Positions 888 through 57,004 of a stretch of 64,000 bases of DNA are shown here, piece by piece (position 1 is the first letter of the stretch; every line of letters begins with the position of its first letter). The stretch lies in the IMG/VR virus record IMGVR_UViG_3300050120_000361, positions 124,001 through 188,000 of that record, one strand, 5' to 3'. The position numbers were made by a program, and so were the translations under genes. The notes beneath the pieces were generated by a model. It saw nothing but the letters and a program-made list of their open reading frames with translations. It was not told the origin of the DNA and did not search any database.

Positions 888-3800
888 ATGAGCAATTTTC
901 TCGAGCTTCCATTCGGAATTAAGACATTAACCCCAACACCAGTGATATACTGGGAAGGCCCGTATTCATCCATAGCGGCCGCGAACGCCGCGGTGCCTTT
1001 GGGCGTGCGTTACCCATCCATGACTGTGCGAATAGTCCCTGGCGGCAACACGGCACCGTACATGGCCATGTGGGGCAATGACGTTTCGGACAACGGGCTC
1101 GCGGCGGTGCAGACGGGCGGCGGAGGGGGGAACGTGCAGCCGGTTTCTGGAACTTACGCGGAATTGACGGCTCTGGCCCAGGCGGGTTCATTGGTCCCAG
1201 GCGGCAGGTACCTGCTCACGGACTACAAGACGAGCTGGTGGTCGCCGGCCGACAGCCAGGCGCACACCGCGGATGTCGGCGAGACTTTGGTCCTTTTGGC
1301 GGCGAACGCAAACATATTCTCAAGAATAGCGCAGTCTCTCCAGAACCCAGACGATGAGCTCATATACGAATTCGCCTACAACAACCTGAGCGTAGGCTTT
1401 GAAATAAACTACCCCGTTACCGGCCGCATAATACGGCGCACTGACGTTCGGGGCAACCAGATAAACTTCGACTTCGTGGCGATACAGTTCGCCGGCGTGC
1501 CGGTTTTCGACCCGGACGCCCAGTGCGCCAACAACGTCATAGTCGGCAGCTTCGGCTTCACCGGGACCAACCAGCAGAACCCGGTAGCCGTCATGATACC
1601 GCTAATATACCCAATGGCCATAGCCGCCGGCGCTAACGAGAACTTCATAGACTCTGGCTCCCAGAACATAACCATAGGCGCGGGCTCATGCGGCAACAGG
1701 ATAGGGAAGAACGTCGGGCAGCAGCACGGATACGTAATATCACCGGGCTCTAACAACAACACGGTGGCCGACAACGCCAACCAGGGCGTGGCCGGAATAA
1801 TTGGCTCGGGCTCGAGCTACAATTTACTCGGGAACGGCGTCAGCCGCATAGGCTCGGGATGCTCGCACAACACGGTGCATGACGGCTGGAGCGCGGACAT
1901 AGCCTTCAACAACGGCGGCTCGAGCGGCAACGAAATAGGCCTGAAGGGCAACAGCGGCGGAAGCGGCATAGTGCTCGGCGGCGGCTGCGCCAACAACAAG
2001 GTAAAGGCGCCCAATGTTGACATGTCAGCTGGAGGGATAAACGGCATGGACATAGGCTCCGGCGGCGGACACGTGATAGGAGGCGGCTGCCACGACATAA
2101 CAGTGTCGAACGGCGTGACCAACTTGACATTCGGCAGCTCATGCTATGACATGTGGATTAAGGACGCGGGCCTGAGCGGAACCACCTACGCCAACGGCAC
2201 GAACAATGTTTGGCCATGGTCGCAGGGGGGCGCTTCAGTGATTGAGAAGACGTACTCCGAATTGATGACCCTCATCGCCGGAGCGGGGCTCCAGCCGGGC
2301 GCCACGTACAAGGTGACTGATTATCAGACCACATGGGTTCAGGGCATCACAGGCAAAGTTATAGTTAACGACATTGAACCGCTTTGGGTCAGGGCAATAG
2401 ACGCGTCAACCCTTGAGAAAAGCGTAATTTCACAGCAGTTCCCTTCGGATATTATAGAATGGAATGCCGAGGTGGATACAATACTTCAGGGAAGCCAAGT
2501 GCCTGGCGGCGCTGGAAGCGCCCTGGCCATGATAGACCCCACGGCGCTTACGGGTCAGTACCCGAACCTGGCATCCGTCGGCATAGGCATCGGTTCGGCG
2601 AGCAACCTAACCTGGGACCCGACCATAAGGGGCAGGGTTTCCGAGAACATATCGCCGAACAACGGCGACGGAACCCTTGAGATAATAGTGAGCATACAGA
2701 ACGATGACGACGGCGCGGACCTTCAGGGCCTGCATTTCATGGTGAACGGACAGGACTACTCCTTCGTATCCTCCGGCTCCAACGGCCCGACCTACTACTT
2801 GAACGGCGACGGCGTGTCTCCCATTTCAGCGGCCCAATTCCCGGGCAACGTCAACATACAGATGTGGGACAGCCAGCAGCCCCAGGACCTCACCACATCC
2901 CTGCCGCCGTACACCCCGGCGAGCAACGGCCTGCCACTCGAGGACACCCCAACCAAGGGCCTTATAAAACGGCGCGTGGACGAAAACGGTAACAGCATGC
3001 CTTGGGATCTGCGCGCGGCAATGTACGAGTCTCTCGTGCAGGCCGACCAGCCCGCGGGACCTCCCGCCGCGCAGTCCAGTATGTCCATACCATACCGGAT
3101 AGGCGAGCTCACGCACCGCAGGGCGAACTTCAAGCTGGACTCAACCGCACTTACCGGAGACTATTCCGGAGCGGGAAACAATGTGTTCTCCCTGGACAGC
3201 TACGCCAGCGGCTCAAGCGGAACTGGCTCATTCCTGCAATGGCACCTGAACCAGGCGGGAAAGACGGAAGGCGACGGCTTCCATACCGGAGACGGCAGCG
3301 GCGGCGACACCACCCCGATAAACGCCGAGGCGCAGCTCCTGGCGAATTCGGTGCCATTCGCGATACTCTTCAGCGCGAGGAACGCCTACACGGTGAACGC
3401 GAACATAGAGTACGAAGCTCCAAACATATCGGTTTGGGCCAACGTCAAGTTCAAGATAAACGGGGTTAACTACAAAGTGAACACCATTTACGGTAACACG
3501 CAGCAGAGCGTAAACAATCCACTGCTGCGCGTATCGGACAATCAGCCGATAAATTGGACCACGCTCCTTGGCGCCGACCCGATGTCCCACATAGTATCGC
3601 AGAACCTGCTCATACAGCTTTGGGATACCGTGGAGCCGGACGCCTACGACCTGACGCCTTTCTCCCTCGGTAACGACTCGCAGACGTACCAAATAAACAT
3701 ACTCGACGCGAACTCGAGTATGTTGGCCCAATTGGGCTTCGCGTACGGAGAATTCAACAGGACCCAGCCAATCTACCAGCAAACCTACTTCAATCCGGTG

Positions 3801-6800
3801 TACCCGCTAAGCGCGCAGATAACCACCAATATGGACCAGCAAGGCGGGGCATTCAATGTTATGGTCAACGGCCAGGTGACATCCATCGGCGAAATGGCGG
3901 CCAATGAGACTCGGGAGCTCGCCGGCGGGATAACGCCCAATGCGCTTTTCACCATTTACGGGCAGGCGCCTGAAGCCAATTCGCTCGCGGGGCTGCTGAT
4001 AGACGACAGCGCGCTTACGGGAAGATACGATTGGGGCGGCTCCCTGAGCAACGACCAGCAATCAACGGTGGGCAGGGGCGACGCTTACGTATTGGAAGTA
4101 ATTTGCGACCAAACGGCTGAAACCATATTCGCGAAGTCCTACAATGACGGGTCGGTTAACAGGCTTGAACCGCTTATCTACATTCCACAACTTGCTGACG
4201 ACCAGAGCCAATTAACATACACGGTGTACCTGTCGCGCAAGGCCCAATCCAATATTCTGAGGATTTCGGTGAACGGAGTCCTCAGCGCATTCCAGGACAA
4301 CAACATGGCGGCGCGGTATTCTCAGGGATACTCGGCGACAACCCCAATAGCCTCTGGCGTTTCAGGTAACATACAGATAACACTGTTCGATAACGATAAC
4401 GCCCAACCCGCAACATCGCTCTCCGACATTCCGGACCTTTCAGCGGCCGGGCAGTTGCCAAACCCCATTCAGCAGCAATTGGCCGATTGGTCCGAGGGAC
4501 AGCCGGAAATACCTGCAATCTACTCCGACTATGAGGTATTCGACGACTACACGCAGTGCTTCGGCAATTACGCCGAAAGCCCTTTCCTTAGGACGCTCAA
4601 CATAGCGCCGCAGTCGAACGGCAACAGGATACTCGGCAGTTCCGACAAGATAATAATAAGGGGCAATTCCTCGCGGAACACAATAACCGACGCGGTACTC
4701 GTAACACTCGACGAATACTCCGTTGAAAACACCGTGACCGGGACGAACGCCGACGGCAACGGGGCATCACCATACGATGGCGGAGGCTTCACGCACGTGC
4801 GCAACATCTACATAGGCTCAATATCCTCGCGGAACAGGGTGTTCGCCTCCAACACATCCATCCAGGAGCAGTCGTGCGACAACTTCGTAAAAGAGGCAAC
4901 GAGCACCAATTACTCCGCGGTTTCGATAAGCGGCCAGTCCAGCAACAATAAGATATTGGGTACCAATATCTCTATGGGCACAACCTCCAATGACAACTTT
5001 TTCGACGAGCTGTGCAACAACATAACCGCTGGAAACGACTTCAATGACAACCAGGTCTGGAACCAGCACGACATGGTTTACGGAGTCAACTGCACCAGGA
5101 ACATCGAGCAGGACCAAAGCGGACTAAGCAGAGGGGACAATTGGCAGGACCACAACCCCTACCGTTTCGACCCCGCGCCAATAGACATACTTTACAATGA
5201 CCTGCTGACACTCATAGGCGTTGCCGGACTTGTCAGGGGCCGAAACTACAGGATAACGGACTACCGGACAACTTGGGTTCAAGGGCTGACAACCAGGGTC
5301 AGGGCCGCCGACGTGGAGCCGCTGATAGTTACCGCCCTTGACGCGCAGACTCTGGACCAAAAGGTGAAATCCGCGCTGTGGCCAGCCGATGAAATATACT
5401 ACGACATCGAGCAATCCGTTATAGGCGCGCAGTCGCTTTCATACCCCATTACTGGAACAACAAAGTACCGAATAGACCCTTCAGCCCTTCAGTTCCGGGA
5501 CCTTCCGGACCTCACGCAGGGAGGCGTTTCGATGCAGTACGTGCAGTCGGACTCTTCGCCGTTCATGTCGTGGAATTTCCCGGACGGCATAACGGACCTT
5601 TTCCAGCAGACGCAGAACATGCTCGTTCAGGTGATACCCACCTACGCGAACGGCGGCCTCGACGTGAACGACCAGGCCGTTAAGGTAAAAATCAACGGGG
5701 AGGACTTTGCAATGAACGTGGACGGGGACGGCGTTGCCGCTTGGATTTCACAGCAGGACCAGTCAAACCTTGCGGACAGGTCGTGGGGCGGGAACATTTT
5801 AGTTCAGCTTTGGGATTTGGACAACCCAGAAGTCTACTCGCTTCTTCCGCAGACCACTGATGTTCCACAGCTCCCACTCCAGGACGTTCCCATAATGGGC
5901 CGAATATACTCGCGCAAGGACCAGTACGGAAACAAAGCGCCATACGACATCAGAGCGGTACTCGCAGCCTTCGTGCGGCAGGCAGTGCAGCCTGCCGGGC
6001 CGCCAACAGCAATGTTTAAGGCTGATGTTTTGTGGGAAGTCGGGCCGCTTGTGCATACCACGCCTTCGCAGTATTATTTGAAATTCGACAACACAGCGCT
6101 CACAGGCAGTTTCCCGAACAACGTGTCGGTAATATCTGTTGAGAAGTCCAATTCCCAGGACGGGGTGCAGTACTTCGTCAATTTGGCCTACTTCAGGAGC
6201 CACTTCAACTCGCCATTCTCTTCGCAGTTCGGCCTGAACACTGAGATAGCATGGAACGGTGACGCAATAGCCAATATAATGGTGGCGAGCTCCTCAACGA
6301 CGAACCCCCACACTTGGCCTACGAACCTCAAGCTCAAGATAAACGGGGTGAACTACACGACAGCGCCCACATGGCCCAACAACCAGCAGTTCGCGCAGCT
6401 CGTAAGGGTATCTGACGGCGCGCCGATAGACTTGCTTGCTGTATGCTCCTCGACAAGGAGCGGGCGCATGGACAACAACGTTCTTATTCAGCTTTGGGAT
6501 ACCGTTGAGCCGGCTCAATACGCCCTCGAAAACGTGGGAACGCCCGCGGTTCAGGGCAACGAAGACGTGAACTTCTATGTTGGGCTGTTCAACCAGGCGG
6601 ATATTCAGGCCAACCTTGAAATAAAGGCCTCGAACCTCACCCAGGACTACACCGGCGCCAATTCGTACACCTTCAATGTCGGCCCTTTCGGCGACACATC
6701 GGATGGCAGCAATTACCTTCAGGTTGGCAGCCTCAACGGGAACAACCAGGACGTAACCGCCGCGGTTACCAAGGCTGCGATGTCGGCGCAGGCGGTGTAC

Positions 6801-9800
6801 GAATTGGTCGGCGACTTCGCCGACGGCTCATTAAGCGTGGACGCGGGAGGCGTAACCTACTCTCTCGCGAACGGCCAGTTCATATCCGCCGCCGACAATA
6901 CCACTGAGCTCTCCACGGTATCATTCACCGAGGGGACTGTATTCAATCTTTGGGATACCACCCAACCGGCCCCACAGGCACCGGCCCCTGACGGCTTTGA
7001 CACCGGCTTAGCCGTAGATGGCGCGCCGTTCGGCTATGGAACAAAAAACCAGAACCTTGCGCTGCAGGTTATAGACCACACGGCGGAATATGCGGTTGCG
7101 GTTTGGTCTGACCACGACTATGACGGTCCCGGCTTCGATTTGATAGTGAACGGGCACACCGATATAGGCAACGCTCTGCCGAGAATAACGTCCCTGGCCG
7201 CGGGTAAGACGCATTCCACCAACGTCGCCTCCAACGACCTGACCGGCGAGAACATCCAGGTGCAGGTGTTTGGCGACACGGCCAACGGGCTTGTGGGCAT
7301 GCAGTTGGCCACTCTCTTCGGTGGAAACTACGACTGGGCCGGCGGCTCATCCATAGGCGACTGGTTCGATTTGCGGGTCTACAGAGACAGCGACTTTGCC
7401 ATCCTGCTGCAGATAACTCCGGGAAACATACCTGACATCGCGCTCGCTCTTCAGTACCTTGACGCTGCGGACACCTATTCCGTGTATTTCGGCAGGAAGC
7501 TCAACAACAACGTAGTTTCGCTGAACTTCAACGGCACGCAGACAAACTACTCCGACAACAACATAGTGGAATTCGAGGCTGCAACAGCACCCGAATTCCC
7601 GTTATCTTCCGTGATAGCCGCGGGGCTTTCAGGCCAGAATATTGCAATAGCTGTTTGGGATGCAGTTGGGGAACTGAACGGAAGCGCGCCAAACCCTCCG
7701 AGCATACCATACCTCCTACAGCCTGGCGAGCTCGCCCAACCTGCCTTTACGCCGCTTCCGGACTGGACCGACGGCGTGCCCTTCATTCCCGCAATATACG
7801 GCGACTCCCCCATATTTGCCCAAGACGGCACAGTATTGGATAACGTTATAGAGGACCCGCGCACGCTTACAGCAATGTTCGGTAGCGGGTGCGTTGGCAA
7901 CAGGCTCACGGCCGGCTCCGACAGGGTGACAATGCCTGGCTACGCGGTCGGCAACACGATAGACTCTGCCACAGATGTTATGATTAACTACGGCGCGGAG
8001 AACAACTACGTTTCCGGTCTCGACCAGGAAGGCGGCGCAAACAATGTTTTCATTGACGGCAGCTCCTCGGGGAACAAGGTTTACGGCAGCGGAATATCCA
8101 TAGGACAGAACAGCAATGACAACATTGTCGGACCTAACGCATGGCTGTCAAAGATAATGAACGGCTGCCAGCGCAACAGGGTTTTCGGCCAGCTGAACCT
8201 GATAGAGGACGGCGGCGTTGAGAACTACATCGACGAACAGAGCCAGTCTGTTAAGGTGGGACTCAATGGCAAGCAGAACAGCTTCATAAACAGCTCATTC
8301 GTGACCTACGGGCAGAACGCCGTGAGGAACACCGAGCTCAACAGCTCATACGTGACCCGCCCCGACAACTGGTCGGGTAACGACAACTCATCCGGTCCGG
8401 CCCTCCTTCTCCAGATAGGGAACATACTTAACGCGCACTTCCACCTCGCAACCCTGAACTGGCAGCAGGTCAACTCGCTCGTCACAAGGGACATGTTCGA
8501 CGACGGCGAACCATTGGACGCCGAGAGCGACGCGTACATACTCGAAAACACACAGTCCGTAAGCGTCACATCAACCCTTGAGGACGGCCACGCGCACACC
8601 GTATCTGTCAACTACAACCCGTACACGCGCAAATTCTTCGTTGACCCGGCAACGGTTCCGGCCAACCACCTGTGCTGGTTCATCGGACAGGACGCTGAAG
8701 CTATTGTCTGGAGCAGTTACGCCGAATTGTCGGCGCTCGCTGCCAACCAGCAGCTCGAGCCCGGCAAAAAGTACGTGATGTCTGACTTCACGAGCAAATT
8801 CAGGTACAACGGCGGCATAACAACAGGGCCGGTTGAGTGGCTCGTCCTTGAGGCGCTGAACCCCGGGCAGTTCCACGGCAAGGCGCAATCCATGCAGTAC
8901 CCCAAAGATGATATTTGGTACGACATTGCCGCTGGACCGATAATATCCGCCGATGCGGTTCAGGGATGGTCCAACACGCAATTGGAAGTCAATTCCGACG
9001 GCGTGGACGCTGCGCCGTTCGCTGGTGCAACCCTGATGCTCTACAACGCCACTACAGGGGAGTCGGTGCAGACCATAAATCCGGGCGCGGGCGACTCGCA
9101 AAACGCGATAGTACAGGTTCCCATAGGGTTCGCTTTCAGATTGTATCCCCTCGGCGTGTCCACAGGCACTTTTTGGGTGCAGATAAACGGCACGTCCTAC
9201 GAGGTTGGCCCTTACGACAATTCCGCGATAAGCGACGTCACGCAGGCGACCCAGATAGGTCCGGACATCGCGGCTAACTACTACGGTCAGGTGTACCTTG
9301 ACCAGGCGCAGGTTCCGCTGTACAGCCCATTGCCGGACAATTCCGCCGGCGTGCCCGAGCAGCAGGTTGCGATACCGGGAATGATAACCCGCCGCGTCGA
9401 TGACCAATTGAATGAGGCCCAGTACGACCACCGCAACGTTTACTTCTACTCGGGCGGGGAGGCCACCTACACTTTCGGCGCCAGTTCGAGGAACAACACC
9501 GTAAAGGCCATCATGCAGGACATCAACACCTATCCTCTGTGCTTTCTCGGGGCCGGGGCCATAGGGAACTATTTGGACGAAAGCTGCTTCGCCGTCTCAA
9601 CGGGCATTAACCCGGCTTTCAACAGGATTGAGGCCTGCCAGGTAATGACAATGGGCGAAGGCTGCCAGGGCAATTACTACCGAGGAGTCAGCAATTTCAG
9701 CGTGGCTGACGGAACTGTTGGCTTCGCGCAATGGGACTTCATGTACAGGAACCTCCAAGTGGTTAGGGACACCCCGAGCGGCCCGGTGGATGGCTCCAAC

Positions 9801-10010
9801 AACCTGTTCACCTTCAACCAGGAGTGCGTCGCGGGCACCGAAGAGGTATTCGTCAATGGCCTGCTAATGGAGCCAGGAACGGACTACACCATAGTGGATG
9901 TGAGCGGCTTCACCCTTGCGGTGACGCCCACCCCAACAGGGTTCAACGGAGCGCCGACGAGGATAAGGTGCAACTACCAGACACCCGGTCCGGGAGTCGG
10001 AGGGTTCTAA
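888..10010 (+). CDS. giant modular tail fibre / virion appendage protein (3040 aa)
   Basis: Four copies of a Y.EL..L.....L.PG..Y..TDY module, Asn/Gly-rich beta-helix-like repeats, repeated ALTG...QLWD domains, C-terminal VNG....GTDYT domain. Confidence 0.75.
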   Translation: MSNFLELPFGIKTLTPTPVIYWEGPYSSIAAANAAVPLGVRYPSMTVRIVPGGNTAPYMAMWGNDVSDNGLAAVQTGGGGGNVQPVSGTYAELTALAQAGSLVPGGRYLLTDYKTSWWSPADSQAHTADVGETLVLLAANANIFSRIAQSLQNPDDELIYEFAYNNLSVGFEINYPVTGRIIRRTDVRGNQINFDFVAIQFAGVPVFDPDAQCANNVIVGSFGFTGTNQQNPVAVMIPLIYPMAIAAGANENFIDSGSQNITIGAGSCGNRIGKNVGQQHGYVISPGSNNNTVADNANQGVAGIIGSGSSYNLLGNGVSRIGSGCSHNTVHDGWSADIAFNNGGSSGNEIGLKGNSGGSGIVLGGGCANNKVKAPNVDMSAGGINGMDIGSGGGHVIGGGCHDITVSNGVTNLTFGSSCYDMWIKDAGLSGTTYANGTNNVWPWSQGGASVIEKTYSELMTLIAGAGLQPGATYKVTDYQTTWVQGITGKVIVNDIEPLWVRAIDASTLEKSVISQQFPSDIIEWNAEVDTILQGSQVPGGAGSALAMIDPTALTGQYPNLASVGIGIGSASNLTWDPTIRGRVSENISPNNGDGTLEIIVSIQNDDDGADLQGLHFMVNGQDYSFVSSGSNGPTYYLNGDGVSPISAAQFPGNVNIQMWDSQQPQDLTTSLPPYTPASNGLPLEDTPTKGLIKRRVDENGNSMPWDLRAAMYESLVQADQPAGPPAAQSSMSIPYRIGELTHRRANFKLDSTALTGDYSGAGNNVFSLDSYASGSSGTGSFLQWHLNQAGKTEGDGFHTGDGSGGDTTPINAEAQLLANSVPFAILFSARNAYTVNANIEYEAPNISVWANVKFKINGVNYKVNTIYGNTQQSVNNPLLRVSDNQPINWTTLLGADPMSHIVSQNLLIQLWDTVEPDAYDLTPFSLGNDSQTYQINILDANSSMLAQLGFAYGEFNRTQPIYQQTYFNPVYPLSAQITTNMDQQGGAFNVMVNGQVTSIGEMAANETRELAGGITPNALFTIYGQAPEANSLAGLLIDDSALTGRYDWGGSLSNDQQSTVGRGDAYVLEVICDQTAETIFAKSYNDGSVNRLEPLIYIPQLADDQSQLTYTVYLSRKAQSNILRISVNGVLSAFQDNNMAARYSQGYSATTPIASGVSGNIQITLFDNDNAQPATSLSDIPDLSAAGQLPNPIQQQLADWSEGQPEIPAIYSDYEVFDDYTQCFGNYAESPFLRTLNIAPQSNGNRILGSSDKIIIRGNSSRNTITDAVLVTLDEYSVENTVTGTNADGNGASPYDGGGFTHVRNIYIGSISSRNRVFASNTSIQEQSCDNFVKEATSTNYSAVSISGQSSNNKILGTNISMGTTSNDNFFDELCNNITAGNDFNDNQVWNQHDMVYGVNCTRNIEQDQSGLSRGDNWQDHNPYRFDPAPIDILYNDLLTLIGVAGLVRGRNYRITDYRTTWVQGLTTRVRAADVEPLIVTALDAQTLDQKVKSALWPADEIYYDIEQSVIGAQSLSYPITGTTKYRIDPSALQFRDLPDLTQGGVSMQYVQSDSSPFMSWNFPDGITDLFQQTQNMLVQVIPTYANGGLDVNDQAVKVKINGEDFAMNVDGDGVAAWISQQDQSNLADRSWGGNILVQLWDLDNPEVYSLLPQTTDVPQLPLQDVPIMGRIYSRKDQYGNKAPYDIRAVLAAFVRQAVQPAGPPTAMFKADVLWEVGPLVHTTPSQYYLKFDNTALTGSFPNNVSVISVEKSNSQDGVQYFVNLAYFRSHFNSPFSSQFGLNTEIAWNGDAIANIMVASSSTTNPHTWPTNLKLKINGVNYTTAPTWPNNQQFAQLVRVSDGAPIDLLAVCSSTRSGRMDNNVLIQLWDTVEPAQYALENVGTPAVQGNEDVNFYVGLFNQADIQANLEIKASNLTQDYTGANSYTFNVGPFGDTSDGSNYLQVGSLNGNNQDVTAAVTKAAMSAQAVYELVGDFADGSLSVDAGGVTYSLANGQFISAADNTTELSTVSFTEGTVFNLWDTTQPAPQAPAPDGFDTGLAVDGAPFGYGTKNQNLALQVIDHTAEYAVAVWSDHDYDGPGFDLIVNGHTDIGNALPRITSLAAGKTHSTNVASNDLTGENIQVQVFGDTANGLVGMQLATLFGGNYDWAGGSSIGDWFDLRVYRDSDFAILLQITPGNIPDIALALQYLDAADTYSVYFGRKLNNNVVSLNFNGTQTNYSDNNIVEFEAATAPEFPLSSVIAAGLSGQNIAIAVWDAVGELNGSAPNPPSIPYLLQPGELAQPAFTPLPDWTDGVPFIPAIYGDSPIFAQDGTVLDNVIEDPRTLTAMFGSGCVGNRLTAGSDRVTMPGYAVGNTIDSATDVMINYGAENNYVSGLDQEGGANNVFIDGSSSGNKVYGSGISIGQNSNDNIVGPNAWLSKIMNGCQRNRVFGQLNLIEDGGVENYIDEQSQSVKVGLNGKQNSFINSSFVTYGQNAVRNTELNSSYVTRPDNWSGNDNSSGPALLLQIGNILNAHFHLATLNWQQVNSLVTRDMFDDGEPLDAESDAYILENTQSVSVTSTLEDGHAHTVSVNYNPYTRKFFVDPATVPANHLCWFIGQDAEAIVWSSYAELSALAANQQLEPGKKYVMSDFTSKFRYNGGITTGPVEWLVLEALNPGQFHGKAQSMQYPKDDIWYDIAAGPIISADAVQGWSNTQLEVNSDGVDAAPFAGATLMLYNATTGESVQTINPGAGDSQNAIVQVPIGFAFRLYPLGVSTGTFWVQINGTSYEVGPYDNSAISDVTQATQIGPDIAANYYGQVYLDQAQVPLYSPLPDNSAGVPEQQVAIPGMITRRVDDQLNEAQYDHRNVYFYSGGEATYTFGASSRNNTVKAIMQDINTYPLCFLGAGAIGNYLDESCFAVSTGINPAFNRIEACQVMTMGEGCQGNYYRGVSNFSVADGTVGFAQWDFMYRNLQVVRDTPSGPVDGSNNLFTFNQECVAGTEEVFVNGLLMEPGTDYTIVDVSGFTLAVTPTPTGFNGAPTRIRCNYQTPGPGVGGF

Positions 10011-37735: not shown

Positions 37736-39565
37736 ATGAGCAGACTGAACAACCTCAACGAAGCGGTAATAGACACCACCAAATTCACAGGAAATGGCGG
37801 CGGTGACTTGAACATCAGACTCGCTAAGAAAGGCGCTGGAAAGTCCCTGCTTGACGACATTGAGGACGAGGACGCCGGCGCATTTGCGCCCCTTTTGCCT
37901 AACGACATTGTAGACACAAAGACAATAGCGCAGAGGCTCGCTGAAAAGAATGAGCAGTTGGCAGCCCAAACAGTTAAGGACACGAACAGGGCCGCCGAGC
38001 TTAAGGCGCTGATGCAGCTCAGGCAGAAGAAGCGCCCCGAGATAAGGCACCAGAAAACCGAGAAACAGGACCTGAACGCACAACTGCTCGACAGAACCGA
38101 TGCCGAGGAAATGCAGCTGCAGCTGCAGAACAGGCAGTTGATACAGGACTACACCGAGGCAACCGGCAACCGGCTCCCTGAAGACACTGAAATGGTGGAG
38201 ACCGTGGAGCAGATTGAGGAGGCGCTTGACGAGATACCGACAGGCGACAAGGAGGTCACGCTCGCGGACTTCGACATCGTTCCGACACCAATCCGCAAGG
38301 ACAAGACGGGCTACACAAAGACCCTCGTAACCATAAAGAAGGGCTCCGTTCCACAGGAGATGAGCGCGCTCGCCACTGAGGTTAAGAAGCTGTCCAAGGG
38401 CGTGATAAGGCACCGCATAATGGACATGCGCACCATAGCGAACACCAACAAGACGCAGCTGCGCGGGTCTGATTTAAAGCTCGGCCTCGTGTCAATAAAC
38501 TTCAAGCCCGACGGCGAGAGCCGCGTCAACAAGGGCACCAGGTTCATAGTGTCCGTTCCGGAGGACTTCCAATCCTCACGGGACGTTGTCGTGTACATAC
38601 AGGAAAGCCGCGACAAGACGATACTGGTCCTGAAAGGGAACACTTTCTCCAACTGGCCGACAATGCAGGAATTCCTTGCCGAGGCCATAGCGAATTACTA
38701 CCAGTACGGGTTCGCTTCAACCAAGACCATGCTCAAATCCAACGGCATAAGCAATCCGCTCCTTGCCGTGGTTAAGTCGGTTTCATCCTCTGGGAGATAC
38801 ACGGTCGAGCCGAAGACGGACGCCGAAGGGCGCATCGAGCAGCTAACCATAGAGAGCAAGGGCACTGACAACCAGTGGCTTCGCGTCGTGGTGCTCGAGG
38901 GGCAGCTTGCTGCGACATACAAGGTCAAGTGCCGTTCCGAGATTGACACCAATTGGTCAGTGGACATAAACAACCCAAAAGGGCATCCTCTCACCATACT
39001 GGACCTGAACGGGGACAAGTTCATAGGCATACTTGACAAGCTTTACGCGAAACAGGACTGGGGAATGGACTCTGGTGGAAGCAGGGAATACTACATGCTT
39101 GCCAAGCTGACCTACCGTGCGCTGAGGGACGCGTTCGTCAGGATGTGGACTATAGTGGATGAGCCGGAGACCAACGCAATAGGCCTGGTCATTGGCGGCA
39201 CGCTTTCGCAGAAGGACACCGCAAAGGACATACCAGGCTCGTACGCCGCGGAGGGCATTATAGGCAAGACCAGCCATTTCGACTACTTCATACTGACCTA
39301 CCTTGCGGTGCAGGAACTGGGCGGCGACAAGCGCAATCCGCAGGAGTACATCACCACGGACGAGTACCATGAAAAGTACAACATAGCCAACAGGGGCAGG
39401 TACCAGGACAGACCCGCTACCATTCTCAAGAAAGAGGGCGAAAAGCGCAACTACCACGCAAGGGTGTACAAGTTCCAGCTCGAATACGAAATAGCCGGCA
39501 GCAAGCACAAGCTTGTCAACAGCTCATTGGATGCCATACTCGAAGAGAGCGGCCTGCTCAAATAA
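37736..39565 (+). CDS. hypothetical protein, possible head-internal protein
   Basis: 609 aa; N-terminal NLNEAV; charged coiled-coil N-terminal half. Confidence 0.6.
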   Translation: MSRLNNLNEAVIDTTKFTGNGGGDLNIRLAKKGAGKSLLDDIEDEDAGAFAPLLPNDIVDTKTIAQRLAEKNEQLAAQTVKDTNRAAELKALMQLRQKKRPEIRHQKTEKQDLNAQLLDRTDAEEMQLQLQNRQLIQDYTEATGNRLPEDTEMVETVEQIEEALDEIPTGDKEVTLADFDIVPTPIRKDKTGYTKTLVTIKKGSVPQEMSALATEVKKLSKGVIRHRIMDMRTIANTNKTQLRGSDLKLGLVSINFKPDGESRVNKGTRFIVSVPEDFQSSRDVVVYIQESRDKTILVLKGNTFSNWPTMQEFLAEAIANYYQYGFASTKTMLKSNGISNPLLAVVKSVSSSGRYTVEPKTDAEGRIEQLTIESKGTDNQWLRVVVLEGQLAATYKVKCRSEIDTNWSVDINNPKGHPLTILDLNGDKFIGILDKLYAKQDWGMDSGGSREYYMLAKLTYRALRDAFVRMWTIVDEPETNAIGLVIGGTLSQKDTAKDIPGSYAAEGIIGKTSHFDYFILTYLAVQELGGDKRNPQEYITTDEYHEKYNIANRGRYQDRPATILKKEGEKRNYHARVYKFQLEYEIAGSKHKLVNSSLDAILEESGLLK

Positions 39566-49941: not shown

Positions 49942-51474
49942 ATGCTGATAGACTACACCCAAAAGAAGGATAGCATTGAAATCTCCTACGTCAATGAGGC
50001 TAAGAACATTGTGGTGGAGAACCTCCCGCTCAAGAAGGGCTATTACAGGTACGTGGCCTGTGAGGATTGGGACAGGGACAGGATTGAGGGGCTTCGCTCA
50101 TTCAAGGCTAACAGCGCCATAAAGAGGGAGCCGGCCAAGTACTTCCAGAACCACAACATAAACGAGTTCTTCACAAGGGACCTGCGCGACGACTACCCAG
50201 AGGTGTACGAGCGCACCTCGCAGCTGAACGTTCCGAACCCGTACTCGGTCGACATAGAGACGGAGATAACCGACAAGTACGGGTACTCCACGCCGGAACG
50301 GGCCGAAAACCGCATACTGTCCATAGCCATAACCGACATCAACCTTAACTCCATACTCTTCATACTCAAGAACCCGAACCAGCCGACATTCGGCGAAAGC
50401 GACAGGCTTGAGATAAGGGGGGTTATAATGAACGCGCTCGGCGCGAGCTTCGCCAACAAGTACGACTACGAGTTCGACATTAGGGTGTTCGACACGGAGG
50501 GGGAGATGCTCAGCGTATTCGCGGAGTGCGTCAACAAGTACTTCCACAGCATGATAGGCTGGAACATTGAGCTTTTCGATTGGGTTTGGATAATCAACAG
50601 GATGGAGAAGAACGGAATAGACCTGCGCAAGATGTCGCCAACCTTTAGGAAGATAACCAAGCGCTTCAAGCGCAAGGACGGAACAGAGGTGAAGGTAGAC
50701 TTTCCGGCGCACAGGCCGGTCATAGACTATATGGACCAGTTCAAGGGAAGTCTCATCTACAACAACCTCGGCTCCTACTCGCTGGACTTCGTTTCAGAGC
50801 TGATACTCAAGCTGAAGAAGGTGATGTACGACGGCAACCTGCGCAAGCTGTACAACGAGCAGTACAACAGGTTCTGCGGTTACGCCTTCATGGACACCAT
50901 ACTCGTTATGCTGAACCACAAGGCCACCAACCTATACAACGTGGACTTCTTCGAGTCTTACTTCAACAACATACCGTACGCGAAGATAAGCCAGAACGCC
51001 ATATCCGAAGCACTCGTTTACAATGAGCTGCGCCCAGAGGGGATATTCCTTCTCTCGTCCGAATTCAATACGCCAGTGAAGCGCAAGTACAAGGGCGGTT
51101 ACGTGAAGACGCCTACAAAGAAGCAGATACTCGCCGGGGCGGGGCTCGACTTCAGCGGGCTCTACCCGAACAGCATGATTTCCATGTACCTGTCCCCGGA
51201 CGGAAAGGTGGACTCCATAGAGATAGACGAGGACACGTGGGAGCCGCTCAACGACCGAGAGATGCAGAAGTGGCTGAAGTACAAGGAAATGGGCTACACG
51301 CTGACTCCAATGGGCAGGATATACGACGGCACCACCGACAAGCTCTTCGTGCGCATTGAGAAGAAGCTCATAGCCCAGCGCAAGATATTCAAGGGGCACG
51401 CCGAGGACATCTACCTGAACATAACTCCCAAGCTCGAGAAGCTCATAGCCAAGAAGAAATTGGAACTCGCATAA
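49942..51474 (+). CDS. gp43A: family B DNA polymerase, N-terminal fragment (3'-5' exonuclease, motif A, first fingers helix)
   Basis: ExoI DIETE, ExoII GWNIELFD, ExoIII YAFMD, YKGGYV, motif A DFSGLYPNSM. Confidence 0.9.
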   Translation: MLIDYTQKKDSIEISYVNEAKNIVVENLPLKKGYYRYVACEDWDRDRIEGLRSFKANSAIKREPAKYFQNHNINEFFTRDLRDDYPEVYERTSQLNVPNPYSVDIETEITDKYGYSTPERAENRILSIAITDINLNSILFILKNPNQPTFGESDRLEIRGVIMNALGASFANKYDYEFDIRVFDTEGEMLSVFAECVNKYFHSMIGWNIELFDWVWIINRMEKNGIDLRKMSPTFRKITKRFKRKDGTEVKVDFPAHRPVIDYMDQFKGSLIYNNLGSYSLDFVSELILKLKKVMYDGNLRKLYNEQYNRFCGYAFMDTILVMLNHKATNLYNVDFFESYFNNIPYAKISQNAISEALVYNELRPEGIFLLSSEFNTPVKRKYKGGYVKTPTKKQILAGAGLDFSGLYPNSMISMYLSPDGKVDSIEIDEDTWEPLNDREMQKWLKYKEMGYTLTPMGRIYDGTTDKLFVRIEKKLIAQRKIFKGHAEDIYLNITPKLEKLIAKKKLELA

Positions 51475-53485: not shown

Positions 53486-54757
53486 ATGTCGCAAAACCAA
53501 TTCTCACAAAGATACCTTGAACTCAAAAAACTCACAGATGATGATGAATACCTCGACAGGCTGAGCGTTGACGAGCTTACCAAACTGTTGGCCGAAACGG
53601 AGGCCACCAGACAAGAGTACAAGAACTTGGAGCTTATAGTGAAGCGTGACGCGAACTCGCTCTACGGCACTGCGGCTTCCATATACTTCTCCTTGGGTGA
53701 CTTCGACCTGGCAGAGGACATCACAACGGTTGGGAGCTGGCACTACACCCGCCTTGTGGACAGGGCCATAAACAACTTCTTCAAGGCCTGGGGCGAAGAG
53801 GAGCTCGCGAAGGTTCAGGAATTCTACCCGCAGGTAAGCGAGCTTAAGAGGTTCACCCAATACGTGCCTGACAGCGTGAACGACATATGCGTCTACGGCG
53901 ACACGGACTCGAGGTACATGGACATAGGCATGGTTTACCAGCTTATGGGTATTGAGCTCCCCAGGTACGATGCCGAAGGCGACAGGGAACTTTCGGATTT
54001 TGTGCTGTTCCTGATGGATAATTTCATAAACGCCCTGATAAAGAAAACCATAGGCGACGACATAGATAAGCGGAACGGAAATCCGGGCTATTTGAAGATG
54101 ACGCACGAACGTACCACGAGAAAGGGCGTTTTCCAGGCCAAAAAGAAATACGTGCTCGCTGACATATACAAGGACGGTAAGTTCCTTGACAAGCCGACCC
54201 TTAAGGAGGTTGGCGTCGAGCTGCGTAAGGGCGAGCTCAATGGAAGAATAAAGAAAATCATACGCACATTAATTGAGAAGTTCATGCTCAAGGGCTATGA
54301 TGTGGTCATGCTCCGCAACGAAACGGTGAAGATAATCGACTACATCAAGATGCGCAAGGAGAAGGACTGCATCTACAGGATAACGGCTGTCAGCGGCCTG
54401 CAGGGCGTAGTCAAAAACGAGAAGAACGTTTGGGTGTGCCCGAACAAGAGCCATTTCCAGATTAAGGTGGCCCTCTCCTGGTACAACTTCGTAGAGAAGA
54501 ACAACCTGTGGGACGAGTACAAGCCGCCTTTCGAGGGCCAGAAGATGAACTTCTACTACGGCAGGGACGCGCAGGTGATAGCTGTTCCGGACGATATAGA
54601 CATAACTAAGGTTCCTTTCCTGCCCGAACCGGACTGGAACCTAATGCTAAACGCGATTTTAATCAAACCGCTCCTAAGATACATATACGAGGACAAAAAA
54701 GTGTCCGTGGAGGACATAGAGAATTTCCTACTCAACATAAAGCAATTGAAATTTTAA
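53486..54757 (+). CDS. gp43B: family B DNA polymerase, C-terminal fragment (motifs B and C, thumb)
   Basis: K...NSLYG, YGDTDS, KKKY, G.E motifs. Confidence 0.9.
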   Translation: MSQNQFSQRYLELKKLTDDDEYLDRLSVDELTKLLAETEATRQEYKNLELIVKRDANSLYGTAASIYFSLGDFDLAEDITTVGSWHYTRLVDRAINNFFKAWGEEELAKVQEFYPQVSELKRFTQYVPDSVNDICVYGDTDSRYMDIGMVYQLMGIELPRYDAEGDRELSDFVLFLMDNFINALIKKTIGDDIDKRNGNPGYLKMTHERTTRKGVFQAKKKYVLADIYKDGKFLDKPTLKEVGVELRKGELNGRIKKIIRTLIEKFMLKGYDVVMLRNETVKIIDYIKMRKEKDCIYRITAVSGLQGVVKNEKNVWVCPNKSHFQIKVALSWYNFVEKNNLWDEYKPPFEGQKMNFYYGRDAQVIAVPDDIDITKVPFLPEPDWNLMLNAILIKPLLRYIYEDKKVSVEDIENFLLNIKQLKF

Positions 54758-54769
54758 GAAACAACATAA

Positions 54770-56590
54770 ATGAAACAGAACCTTAATACCGCTTTTTTGG
54801 GCCCAAACAGCTATCCTGCAGTGGTAGGCTCAATTTACGACGCTCTTAACGAGGCCGTATGCGACACCACAGCAGGAAACGAATTGGTCAGAGAGGCCAT
54901 TCAGAAAATGAATGAGTCCACTACCCCGGTATTGGACCTTAAGGATTTCACAACAAACGCCGAAAAGGTAGCACCGAACGACACCAAGCTAATGGACGTA
55001 ATCGACTTCGCCCGCAAGCAGGTGAAGGGGGGAGACCTGAACTGCCTGATAAACATAGCCAAGGAGGAGCACATCCAGGAGCAGAGCCGCACCGGCATGC
55101 CAACCCCGGAGGCTACAATAAAGAACTGGGAAGAGATAATGAACAAGCCATCGAGCGTAATCGAGGAGGGCATAAAGAACGGCCTGTTCAAGGGCCTTGA
55201 CTCCAAGCTTTACATGGAGCTTGAGAACATAATCTCCGAAGACGGAAAGAACAAGTCGAAGAACAAGGTGGTAGCCCCGCAGGACCACCACGAAGGCAAC
55301 GTGCTGAACGAGTCCGCCACGCTGCTGTCACCTACCGGCAATATAGCAATATACGCCCCAATTGGCGTTAGGATGGAGGACCCCAAAAACAACAGAATAC
55401 TGATGCTTACTGAGAACGCCGTGCTCACGTACGACCGCGAGAATGAGACGTTCTTCTCCCTGAACGAGAGTGAGTACAAGGACCTTAACATCCCTGACCG
55501 CCACCGCAGGCTGATGACCGCCCTGCAGACTCTTCCGTTCGACGCCGAGAAGCAGGTGTTCTCGCTTAACGAGTCATGGGATTTCGGCCTGTCCCTCAAC
55601 GACAACGGAGGAGTGGTACTTTCAAGGAACGGCAAGTCAACTGAGATGAAAAGCGAGGATGTTCCAAACTTCCTAATGGAGTCCATAGACATATACGCCG
55701 GAGAGAACAGCAACAAGAAATTCGACAGGGTGCGCTTCGCCGCGGATGCGGACAATTTCGTAATGCTAATGGAAAACCACGACAGGCTGCAGCGCCTTGA
55801 CAAGCTCCGCACCATACGCAACCTCGAGGACGGCAAGTACATCATGGTTGACACCCGCACCGAAATGGTCCCAGTGTTCATAACCTCCTCAGAGGGTCCG
55901 AAACTGTTCGAGTCGTACGAGGAGCTTACGCGCGAGGGCATGTCTGTGCTTAACGAGTCCGTTGAGGCGATATTCACGCCGCACCTTCAGCGAGAGCACG
56001 CGTTCTACAAGAACCAAAAGGAAATCATACGCACCCTGAACGAGTCGCAGCACGAGATAAACCACCTGATAAAGAAGACCACCAAGCTCCGCGACATGGC
56101 CGATGAGGACAGTCCGGCTATGGACCTCCTGAACGAGCAGGACGCCAAGCTGCGCGGCGGACTTGAAAAGAATATGAAGGCCCTTGACCGCGTGGTGAAC
56201 ATGGCCACCCCATACGGGATGTCGCTTAACGAGGCCGTGCAGTCAATAACCGTTACCGACTTTTCAGAGTACATTTCCACCACTCCGCTCACTCCCATAA
56301 AGGACGTGCTGACTGGGACAAAAATAGCGGAATTCGTTGCACGTCTGGGCAACACCGGAATGGTGCACGCGCTCGTGTCCGACGACATGAGCAACTACCT
56401 GCTGTGCTACCAGGACGCGAACACCGCGAATTGGGTAATAGACCTTTGGACGCCAATAGACGGCTATTCAGAGGAGTTCCAACAGAACAACTTCGCCGGC
56501 AGGGAAGAGGCATTGGGCTACGTTGAGAACATAAGCGAAGGAGTCGCAGCGGCGCTCAAGTCCGAACAGGCCCTCGCCAAAGCGGCTTAG
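54770..56590 (+). CDS. LNE-repeat protein, candidate prohead core / internal head protein
   Basis: Eight LNE tripeptides plus MNE, LME, LFE, LTE variants; coiled-coil segment. Confidence 0.55.
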   Translation: MKQNLNTAFLGPNSYPAVVGSIYDALNEAVCDTTAGNELVREAIQKMNESTTPVLDLKDFTTNAEKVAPNDTKLMDVIDFARKQVKGGDLNCLINIAKEEHIQEQSRTGMPTPEATIKNWEEIMNKPSSVIEEGIKNGLFKGLDSKLYMELENIISEDGKNKSKNKVVAPQDHHEGNVLNESATLLSPTGNIAIYAPIGVRMEDPKNNRILMLTENAVLTYDRENETFFSLNESEYKDLNIPDRHRRLMTALQTLPFDAEKQVFSLNESWDFGLSLNDNGGVVLSRNGKSTEMKSEDVPNFLMESIDIYAGENSNKKFDRVRFAADADNFVMLMENHDRLQRLDKLRTIRNLEDGKYIMVDTRTEMVPVFITSSEGPKLFESYEELTREGMSVLNESVEAIFTPHLQREHAFYKNQKEIIRTLNESQHEINHLIKKTTKLRDMADEDSPAMDLLNEQDAKLRGGLEKNMKALDRVVNMATPYGMSLNEAVQSITVTDFSEYISTTPLTPIKDVLTGTKIAEFVARLGNTGMVHALVSDDMSNYLLCYQDANTANWVIDLWTPIDGYSEEFQQNNFAGREEALGYVENISEGVAAALKSEQALAKAA

Positions 56591-56638: not shown

Positions 56639-57004
56639 ATGCCCCCTAAACCCGCAAAATCCAAGTCAAAATACTACATACCACCAGAGGAATTCCATGC
56701 AGAGTACAGGCTCTCCCAGGAAAAGGGAGAGCCCACGCGGAAACTGCTTCTGATGTTCGAAAAGATCGCCAAGCGGTACTCTACCAAGTTCAAGTGCGTA
56801 AACAAGCTAGACACGGACAGCTGCGTAAACTACGCGCTTACGGAGGCCTGGCTGAAGTGGGACAAGTACGACGAGACGCGCTCGAAGAACATATTCTCAT
56901 TCTTCACGGAAGTTATAAGCAACGACCTCGCGTACCACCACAACAAGATTACCAAGTACAAGGACCATATAAGCATTGACGTGCTTTTCGCAAACCACCA
57001 GTAA
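56639..57004 (+). CDS. gp55: late transcription sigma factor, gp55-like
   Basis: YYI..EF, KIA..Y, KYD..RSKN.FSFFT.VI motifs. Confidence 0.75.
   Translation: MPPKPAKSKSKYYIPPEEFHAEYRLSQEKGEPTRKLLLMFEKIAKRYSTKFKCVNKLDTDSCVNYALTEAWLKWDKYDETRSKNIFSFFTEVISNDLAYHHNKITKYKDHISIDVLFANHQ

What the first reader, a model, noticed from the sequence alone, without database searches (positions are those of the whole stretch)
54770..56590. Protein with eight LNE motifs: probable prohead-protease substrate defining the cleavage code
Seen: ALNEA, VLNES, SLNES (twice), VLNES, TLNES, LLNEQ and SLNEA, plus MNES, LMES and LFES, usually followed by S or A. LNE also occurs in 29752 (KLNEA), 37736 (NLNEA near the N-terminus), 31726 and the 49726 peptide. 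Known: T4 gp21 cleaves after (L/I)-X-E. Inference: this is a core or internal head protein that is cut into fragments, oddly encoded between the polymerase and gp55 rather than in a head operon.
Basis: partly seen in the sequence, partly recalled or inferred. Interest (0 to 1): 0.62.

Follow-up and report, generated by a model that had tools for sequence, protein, structure and literature searches.

The report
Heavily cut head-protease substrate protein
A 606-residue protein of an uncultured 208-kb peat phage carries far more copies of the phage's predicted head-protease cutting motif (Leu-x-Glu, mostly Leu-Asn-Glu) than any other protein in the genome. It is most likely a head-interior protein that is chopped up during capsid maturation, but this rests on sequence evidence only.

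Summary
ORF 54770-56590 (+, 606 aa) has 8 LNE, against 0.43 expected (P about 2e-8), plus MNES, LTEN, LMES, LMEN and LFES.

The genome is a complete 208.5-kb PAU-like jumbo phage from peat, probably with a Bacteroidota host. It encodes a T4-type prohead protease (Peptidase S77/S80) about 11 kb downstream.

Evidence that the motif is the protease's cleavage site:
- Ranking all 243 ORFs by [LI]xE[SN] enrichment puts the target first, the protease second and the scaffold-like ORF after the protease third.
- The capsid-protein propeptide has three conserved sites. The last aligns with the sequenced mature N-terminus of the phage PAU capsid protein, within one residue.
- In 43 homologues LNE occurs 168 times, against 13-25 for permuted tripeptides, spread over 32 alignment columns.
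- The first motif residue switches from L to I in the Tenacibaculum phages, in both the target homologues and their head proteins.

The protein is a confidently folded family with no Pfam hit, no PDB fold match and no internal repeat. Its gene always lies between the split DNA polymerase and the gp55-like sigma factor (PAU gp111, PTm1 ORF-242, pT24 BPT24_169).

Cleavage and head location remain untested. I class it as a new member of a known kind, of moderate interest.

The parts
54770..56590 (+). Target ORF, 606 aa: a multi-site L-x-E protein and member of an uncharacterised family conserved in PAU-like jumbo phages.
54770..55243 (+). N-terminal all-helical domain (residues 1-158). Contains ALNE|A (54845-54853) and MNE|S (54908-54916). 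The MNE site is L/I/M-x-E in 36 of 43 homologues, with Ser following in 40 of 43.
55244..55318 (+). Disordered linker (residues 159-183, pLDDT about 35). Carries VLNE|S (55304-55312), the best conserved site: LNE in 31 of 43 homologues and [LIM]xE in 40 of 43.
55319..55969 (+). Central alpha/beta domain (residues 184-400; pLDDT 94.5 when folded alone; no PDB fold match). Sites: LTE|N 55406-55414, LNE|S 55460-55468, LNE|S 55565-55573, LME|S 55673-55681, LME|N 55766-55774, LFE|S 55904-55912, LNE|S 55949-55957.
55964..56200 (+). Long helical hairpin (residues 399-477). Sites: LNE|S 56036-56044 and LNE|Q 56129-56137.
56225..56233 (+). SLNE|A junction site (residues 486-488). It is invariant in all six family members that carry the C-terminal extension.
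56234..56587 (+). C-terminal extension (residues 489-606). It has no LNE and occurs only in the closest relatives. It is the candidate mature fragment left after processing.
53486..54757 (+). C-terminal half of the split family-B DNA polymerase. It ends 12 nt before the target's start codon, with no terminator-like site between them.
56639..57004 (+). gp55-like late sigma factor (121 aa), the conserved downstream neighbour.
37736..39565 (+). 609-aa ORF whose N-terminus carries NLNE|A at residues 7-9. It is a candidate head-internal protein with a short cleavable leader, like PAU gp142, gp153 and gp154.

Best explanation
The ORF encodes a protein that is built into the prohead interior as a core, scaffold-like or internal protein. 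During capsid maturation the phage's gp21-type serine protease (Peptidase S77/S80, at G000 191641-193329, about 11 kb downstream) cuts it after Glu at up to 13 L-x-E sites. LNE followed by S is the preferred form.

Cutting would reduce residues 1-488 to fragments of roughly 15-130 residues. In this sub-clade it would also release a 118-residue C-terminal domain that sits behind an invariant LNE|A site.

Shown here: the motif excess, its family-wide maintenance, its sharing with the protease, the scaffold-like ORF and the capsid-protein propeptide, and the co-variation of the first motif residue.

Inferred: that the protease is what reads the motif, that the protein enters the prohead, and which fragments persist.
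For: 1. Motif excess: 8 LNE against 0.43 expected, P about 2e-8.
2. An unbiased ranking of 243 ORFs by [LI]xE[SN] enrichment over their own composition puts the target first (9 against 1.2), the prohead protease second (6 against 0.86) and the acidic, Q-rich ORF after the protease third.
3. The protease's sites start at TLNE|N, residues 201-203, right after the catalytic domain. This is where autoprocessing is expected.
4. The capsid-protein N-terminus has three [LI]xE[SN] sites conserved in eight phages. The third (LFE|S here) aligns with PAU LME64|N. The PAU mature capsid protein is 520 of 585 residues by N-terminal sequencing (PMC5646251).
5. PAU proteins annotated as internal capsid proteins begin with ...LYE..KLNEA.
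6. In 43 homologues LNE occurs 168 times, against 13-25 for permuted tripeptides. Of these, 110 lie outside the two conserved columns, against 19.8 expected, and they are spread over 32 columns, 15 of them singletons. That pattern indicates selection for the number of sites rather than their place.
7. The first motif residue is L in this clade and in PAU but I in PTm1 and pT24, in both target homologues and head proteins, although L and I are about equally common there.
8. Nine of the 13 sites lie in loops, the linker or at the ends of secondary-structure elements.
9. Ser is preferred after the cut. The same preference, and propeptides with several cleavage sites, are documented for the giant-phage protease gp245 (PMC10052503).
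Against: - There is no direct evidence of cleavage or of presence in proheads or virions.
- The gene sits 12 nt after the DNA-polymerase C-terminal half with no terminator between them, and upstream of gp55. It lacks the ATAAATA motif seen upstream of the protease and several structural genes. This suggests co-expression with replication genes.
- The protein is predicted to be a compact, confidently folded multi-domain protein, unlike typical extended scaffolds. Some sites (302, 423) are in the middle of helices.
- PAU gp111 is not annotated as a virion protein, although a fully degraded protein would not be seen anyway.
- The PAU capsid-protein residue count fits a cut one residue after Glu64 (520 rather than 521), so the experimental anchor is only approximate.
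- The complex prediction gave no answer.
Confidence: 0.6

Rival explanations
1. The protein is a non-virion replication or late-transcription accessory. Its L-x-E-S motifs are short linear motifs or capping motifs read by something other than the head protease, and the resemblance to the head-protein motif is coincidental.
For: The synteny polB C-half, then this gene, then gp55-like is strictly conserved across deep divergence: this phage, PAU, PTm1, pT24 and metagenomic relatives. The gap to polB is 12 nt with no terminator. One cluster (P0066) is a polB-target fusion ORF. The fold is globular.
Against: This does not explain why the same motif tops the ranking in the protease and the scaffold-like ORF. 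It does not explain why the first motif residue switches from L to I together with the head proteins. It does not explain why sites turn over in position while their number is kept. There is no similarity to any replication or transcription family in Pfam, PHROGs or the PDB.
Confidence: 0.2
2. The protein is a substrate of the prohead protease but not a structural core component. It could be an assembly chaperone, a timer, or a decoy that occupies the protease or is inactivated by it, coupling head maturation to another process.
For: All the motif evidence for cleavage applies equally. The folded globular architecture and the position among non-head genes fit a regulated factor better than a scaffold.
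Against: T4-type proteases are activated inside the assembled prohead (established knowledge of T4 gp21). A substrate would therefore normally have to be inside the prohead. No regulatory domain is recognisable.
Confidence: 0.15
3. The motif excess is a compositional or repeat artefact: the LNE copies belong to a duplicated structural unit or arise from biased composition.
For: Some sites (LLLES-like at 302, LMEN at 333) are highly conserved in position and lie in helices, so part of the signal could be structural.
Against: Shuffles that keep composition give 0.43 LNE. Permuted tripeptides occur 13-25 times against 168. Profile-profile comparison of the five segments finds no internal repeat, best probability 4%. 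No known repeat fold matches.
Confidence: 0.03

Closest known systems
T4 prohead core and internal proteins processed by gp21 (gp22, gp67, gp68, IPI-III, Alt; cleavage after L/I-x-E)
   Same: A protease of the same family (S77) is encoded next to the portal, scaffold and capsid genes. The cleavage grammar is the same: hydrophobic L or I, any residue, Glu, then the cut. There are many sites per protein, as in gp22. A short N-terminal leader of this kind is seen on other proteins of the clade.
   Different: There is no sequence or fold similarity to any T4 core protein. Asn is strongly preferred as the middle residue and Ser or Asn after the cut. The protein is much larger and predicted to be globular. 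Its gene lies next to the polymerase and gp55, not in the head cluster.
Giant-phage (phiKZ, 201phi2-1, SPN3US) head and ejection proteins with long multi-site propeptides cut by gp175/gp245 (Peptidase S80)
   Same: The protease also matches Pfam S80. Long regions carry several cleavage motifs and are degraded to small peptides. Ser is preferred after the cut. The protease has a C-terminal autoprocessed extension (PMC10052503).
   Different: The motif there is S/A/G-x-E; here it is L-x-E. There is no homology: tblastn against 50,697 phage records found nothing. In most family members the motif-bearing region is the whole protein, not an N-terminal propeptide.
PAU gp111, PTm1 ORF-242, pT24 BPT24_169 (annotated hypothetical, hypothetical and 'DNA ligase 1')
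   Same: They are syntenic homologues, found by profile search and by structure. They show the same motif excess: 9 against 2.4, 11 against 1.7 and 16 against 2.8.
   Different: They are only remotely similar in sequence. The Tenacibaculum phages use I-x-E-S. None has been characterised.

Membership tests
Substrates of a T4-type (gp21, S77/S80) prohead protease | A cognate prohead protease is encoded in the same genome, in a head module. | tested here: met
   PF03420 at 45 bits, PF20034 and phrog_207 match at G000 191641-193329. It lies between the portal (PF07230) and the capsid gene.
Substrates of a T4-type (gp21, S77/S80) prohead protease | Carries the protease's recognition motif (L/I-x-E) above chance. 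| tested here: met
   LNE 8 against 0.43; L[NMFY]E 11 against 0.97. The protein ranks first of 243 ORFs for [LI]xE[SN].
Substrates of a T4-type (gp21, S77/S80) prohead protease | The same motif marks proteins known to be cut in this lineage (capsid-protein propeptide, the protease's own tail, scaffold). | tested here: met
   The PAU capsid-protein mature N-terminus falls at or next to LME64 (PMC5646251). That anchor is good only to within one residue.
Substrates of a T4-type (gp21, S77/S80) prohead protease | Cleavage after Glu is demonstrated, and the protein is present in proheads. | not testable with these tools
   This needs mass spectrometry or N-terminomics of proheads and virions, or an in vitro cleavage assay.
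T4 core/internal protein families (gp22, gp67, gp68, IPs) | Sequence homology. | tested here: not met
   No Pfam or PHROG family above threshold. No PDB sequence match with the family profile.
phiKZ/SPN3US inner-body and ejection proteins | S/A/G-x-E motif and homology to those families. | tested here: not met
   The motif here is L-x-E. tblastn found no match in the phage collection. The only BFVD structural matches are PTm1, pT24 and uncultured phages.
   hhalign of the five segments against each other gives probability of 4% or less. The central domain's best VIA-align Z is 5.0 and its best Foldseek E-value is 6.5e-3 with TM-scores of 0.2 or less. Only the helical hairpin gives generic coiled-coil hits.
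Triphosphate tunnel metalloenzyme (TTM/CYTH) fold, from weak Foldseek rows | Eight-stranded tunnel barrel with a good structural superposition. | tested here: not met
   TM 0.14-0.18 and rmsd 15-21 A for VTC4, ThTPase and Cet1 rows. These families do not appear in the VIA-align list.

The most novel reading that the evidence does not exclude
The family is not a passive scaffold. It would be a folded, clade-specific head-interior component of T=25-class Bacteroidota jumbo phages whose programmed fragmentation at about a dozen LNE sites has a function of its own. Possibilities include forming the unexplained inner densities under the PAU capsid vertices, setting capsid size, or releasing bioactive fragments or a C-terminal cargo domain into the host. 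Alternatively it is a polymerase- or gp55-linked factor that the head protease destroys, coupling capsid maturation to replication or late transcription.
Probability: 0.12. Interest if true: 0.75.

Novelty: new member of a known kind. Interest (0 to 1): 0.42.

Why it matters
Nothing is known experimentally about head maturation in the PAU, PTm1 and pT24 group of Bacteroidota jumbo phages beyond one capsid-protein N-terminus.

This protein family gives the densest sample of the predicted cleavage motif in its clade: L-x-E cut before S, N or A, with Asn favoured in the middle, and I-x-E in the Tenacibaculum phages. The motif can therefore be used to predict propeptides and head-internal proteins across the clade, including its roughly 70 metagenomic clusters.

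The family is also a conserved, confidently folded protein with no known fold, so it is a defined target for structural and proteomic work in the cultured relatives.

If the prediction holds, it is an ordinary extension of T4 and giant-phage maturation biology, not a new principle.

Tried and rejected
- Pfam and PHROGs on the target gave only sub-threshold noise: ODAD1_CC, FTCD_C and a minor-tail PHROG at E about 3e-3.
- tblastn of the target and megablast of 10 kb against 50,697 phage records found no match.
- The family profile against PAU by six-frame search found no hit. The PAU homologue gp111 was found only through synteny, a weak BFVD row and motif content.
- Fold searches found no credible fold. 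This covers the whole model (PDB Foldseek, VIA-align wide, ESM Atlas) and the central domain alone. The Atlas feature and structure look-up was also uninformative.
- The PDB sequence-profile search gave nothing below E = 0.5.
- The internal-repeat hypothesis was rejected.
- The C-terminal 118 residues searched alone found no homologue of comparable length.
- N-terminal extensions in 13 relatives have no consistent junction site and no Pfam domain.
- Complex prediction with the protease domain and target residues 150-300 returned 'no answer'. It is not evidence either way.
- The sigma-70 promoter and terminator scan was uninformative, as expected for a Bacteroidota-type system.
- I could not reach the rest of the ENA contig behind L007 to test a homologue with no LNE against its own head genes.
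- Read laying was not used. No alternative genetic code was used.

Full report
**Observation.** The window holds an ORF at 54770-56590 (+) of 606 residues. LNE occurs 8 times against 0.43 in shuffles of the same protein (Poisson P 2.4e-8). LNE[SA] occurs 7 times against 0.06. The protein holds 8 of the 43 LNE in a proteome of 243 ORFs and 65,199 residues.

**Genome context.** The window is bases 124001-188000 of a 208,538-bp virus record with direct terminal repeats. The same DNA is found in peat metagenomes. Its capsid protein is 32% identical to gp156 of phage PAU, whose host is a Sphingobacterium. It is also related to the capsid proteins of Tenacibaculum phages pT24 and PTm1, the Chryseobacterium MA9V phages and the Lak megaphages. 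Start codons are preceded by A-rich leaders. Both facts point to a Bacteroidota host.

The window encodes tail and baseplate proteins and a 906-aa sheath. It also encodes a family-B DNA polymerase split into two genes with two ORFs between them, then the target, then a gp55-like late sigma factor. About 8-16 kb downstream of the target, outside the window, lies a T4-like head module:
- portal (PF07230);
- an 83-aa ORF;
- a 562-aa prohead protease (PF03420 Peptidase_S77 at 45 bits, also PF20034 S80);
- a 471-aa ORF with a poly-acidic N-terminal half and a Q/K-rich C-terminal half, which looks like a scaffold;
- the 624-aa capsid protein.

**Is the motif a cleavage code?** Five independent lines say yes.
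1. I ranked all 243 ORFs by excess of [LI]xE[SN] over their own composition. The target is first (9 against 1.2), the protease second (6 against 0.86) and the scaffold-like ORF third. The protease's sites begin at TLNE|N, residues 201-203, directly after the catalytic domain, followed by LYE|S, LFE|S and three further LNE. This is the pattern expected for C-terminal autoprocessing.
2. The capsid-protein N-terminus carries three [LI]xE[SN] sites that are conserved in eight phages of the clade. The third (LFE|S here) aligns with LME64|N of PAU. The PAU mature capsid protein is 520 of 585 residues by N-terminal sequencing (PMC5646251), so the cut is at that site to within one residue.
3. PAU proteins annotated as internal capsid proteins (gp142, gp154, and the paralogue gp153) begin with ...LYE..KLNEA, a short leader like the T4 capsid-targeting sequence. 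Window ORF 37736 has NLNE|A at residues 7-9.
4. The target's family has 70 clusters at 50% identity, and LNE is the commonest tripeptide in most of them. In 43 aligned full-length members LNE occurs 168 times, against 13-25 for the five permutations of the same letters. Of these, 110 lie outside the two best-conserved columns, against 19.8 expected, and they are spread over 32 columns with 15 singletons. Sites are gained and lost while their number is kept, which is how short linear motifs behave and not how structural residues behave.
5. The first motif residue is almost always L in this clade and in PAU, but mostly I in PTm1 and pT24. This holds in both the target homologues (9 of 11 and 13 of 16) and their protease and capsid-propeptide sets (10 of 15 and 9 of 14), although L and I are about equally frequent there. 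The motif in the target is therefore read by whatever reads the motif in the head proteins.

**What the protein is.** AlphaFold2 with the family alignment gives a confident multi-domain model (mean pLDDT 78):
- a helical domain, residues 1-158;
- a disordered linker, 159-183, carrying the best-conserved LNES;
- an alpha/beta domain, 184-400, with pLDDT 94.5 and pTM 0.87 when folded alone;
- a long helical hairpin, 399-477;
- a poorly modelled C-terminal extension.

Neither the whole model nor the central domain matches a solved fold. The best Z is 5.0, and the Foldseek rows to TTM enzymes have TM-scores below 0.2. There is no internal sequence repeat. Nine of the 13 sites lie in loops, the linker or at the ends of secondary-structure elements.

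Structure and profile searches identify remote homologues in PTm1 (ORF-242), in pT24 (BPT24_169, annotated 'DNA ligase 1', probably wrongly) and, more weakly, in PAU (gp111). Each lies directly after the polymerase C-terminal half and before the gp55-like gene, and each has a significant [LI]xE[SNA] excess. Metagenomic relatives keep the same order.

The 118-residue C-terminal extension occurs only in the closest relatives. In all six proteins that have it, it is preceded by an invariant LNE|A.

**Mechanism proposed.** The protein enters the prohead and, when the protease is activated, is cut after Glu at up to 13 sites. Residues 1-488 are reduced to small fragments, and in this sub-clade the C-terminal domain is freed. 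This mirrors T4 gp22 and the internal proteins (from established knowledge of T4), and the multi-site propeptides of SPN3US (PMC10052503). The motif statistics, the sharing with head proteins and the co-variation are shown. The identity of the protease as the reader of the motif, the location of the protein and the fate of the fragments are inferred.

**Evidence against.**
- The gene starts 12 nt after the polymerase gene with no terminator-like site.
- It lacks the ATAAATA/TATAAATA motif. That motif sits 11-120 nt upstream of 16 genes, including the protease and the scaffold-like ORF.
- It is predicted to be globular rather than extended.
- No proteomic record of any homologue exists.

These points keep two rivals alive: a non-virion accessory of replication or late transcription, and a non-structural substrate such as a chaperone, timer or decoy. 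A compositional or repeat artefact is excluded.

**Limits.** Everything here is computational. The PAU anchor is approximate. The complex prediction gave no answer.

**Verdict.** This is an uncharacterised, fold-novel family that is most likely the most heavily processed substrate of a T4-type prohead protease in PAU-like jumbo phages. It is a new member of a known kind, of moderate interest.

Noticed in passing
window 1-64000: Strong strand asymmetry in base counts: A 17,656 against T 12,194 (AT skew about 0.2 throughout). Nearly all ORFs are on the + strand. The whole genome is balanced, because the other half is transcribed in the opposite direction.
   Followed up: partly
window 49942-51474 and 53486-54757: The family-B DNA polymerase is split into two genes separated by two ORFs of unknown function (287 and 325 aa). 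The same split is seen in PAU, PTm1 (where an intein is annotated) and pT24.
   Followed up: partly
window 37736-39565: This 609-aa ORF starts MSRLNNLNE|A. That resembles the short cleavable leaders of the PAU 'internal capsid proteins' (gp142, gp153, gp154: ...LYE..KLNEA). It is a candidate head-internal protein.
   Followed up: partly
L002:5414-6826 (G000 193414-194829): The 471-aa ORF between the protease and the capsid gene has an extremely acidic, D-rich N-terminal half and a Q/K-rich C-terminal half. LNE|S lies 11 residues from its end. It is probably the scaffolding protein.
   Followed up: partly
L002:1010-1642 and L002:8885-9826: Two HNH homing-endonuclease genes (phrog_953, E about 1e-65) lie in and beside the head module, one upstream of the portal gene and one after the capsid gene.
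   Followed up: no
G000, 21 sites, e.g. 191607 (34 nt before the protease gene); window 13162, 14173, 36355: ATAAATA (three times as TATAAATA, the T4 late-promoter word) occurs 21 times in 208 kb. Sixteen of these are 11-120 nt upstream of a gene in the right orientation. None precedes the target.
   Followed up: partly
window 888-10010: A 3,040-aa ORF with no PHROG match. It is the largest gene of the window.
   Followed up: no
L014:11058-13868 (pT24 BPT24_169): This 936-aa pT24 protein annotated 'DNA ligase 1' is a homologue of the target family (profile E 6e-14; Foldseek E 4e-9). It is rich in E runs, and the annotation looks wrong.
   Followed up: partly
P0066 (metagenomic protein, 630 aa): One cluster is a single ORF joining the polymerase C-terminal half (PF00136) to the N-terminal part of the target family. 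It may be a real fusion, a read-through from a recoded stop, or an assembly or gene-calling artefact.
   Followed up: no
Whether it is expressed is unknown.
   Followed up: no
window, upstream of start codons (e.g. 54752-54769): Start codons are preceded by A-rich leaders (AACAAAA/AAACAAA, 16-20 times enriched) rather than Shine-Dalgarno sequences. This fits a Bacteroidota host. The DNA is found in peat metagenome runs.
   Followed up: partly
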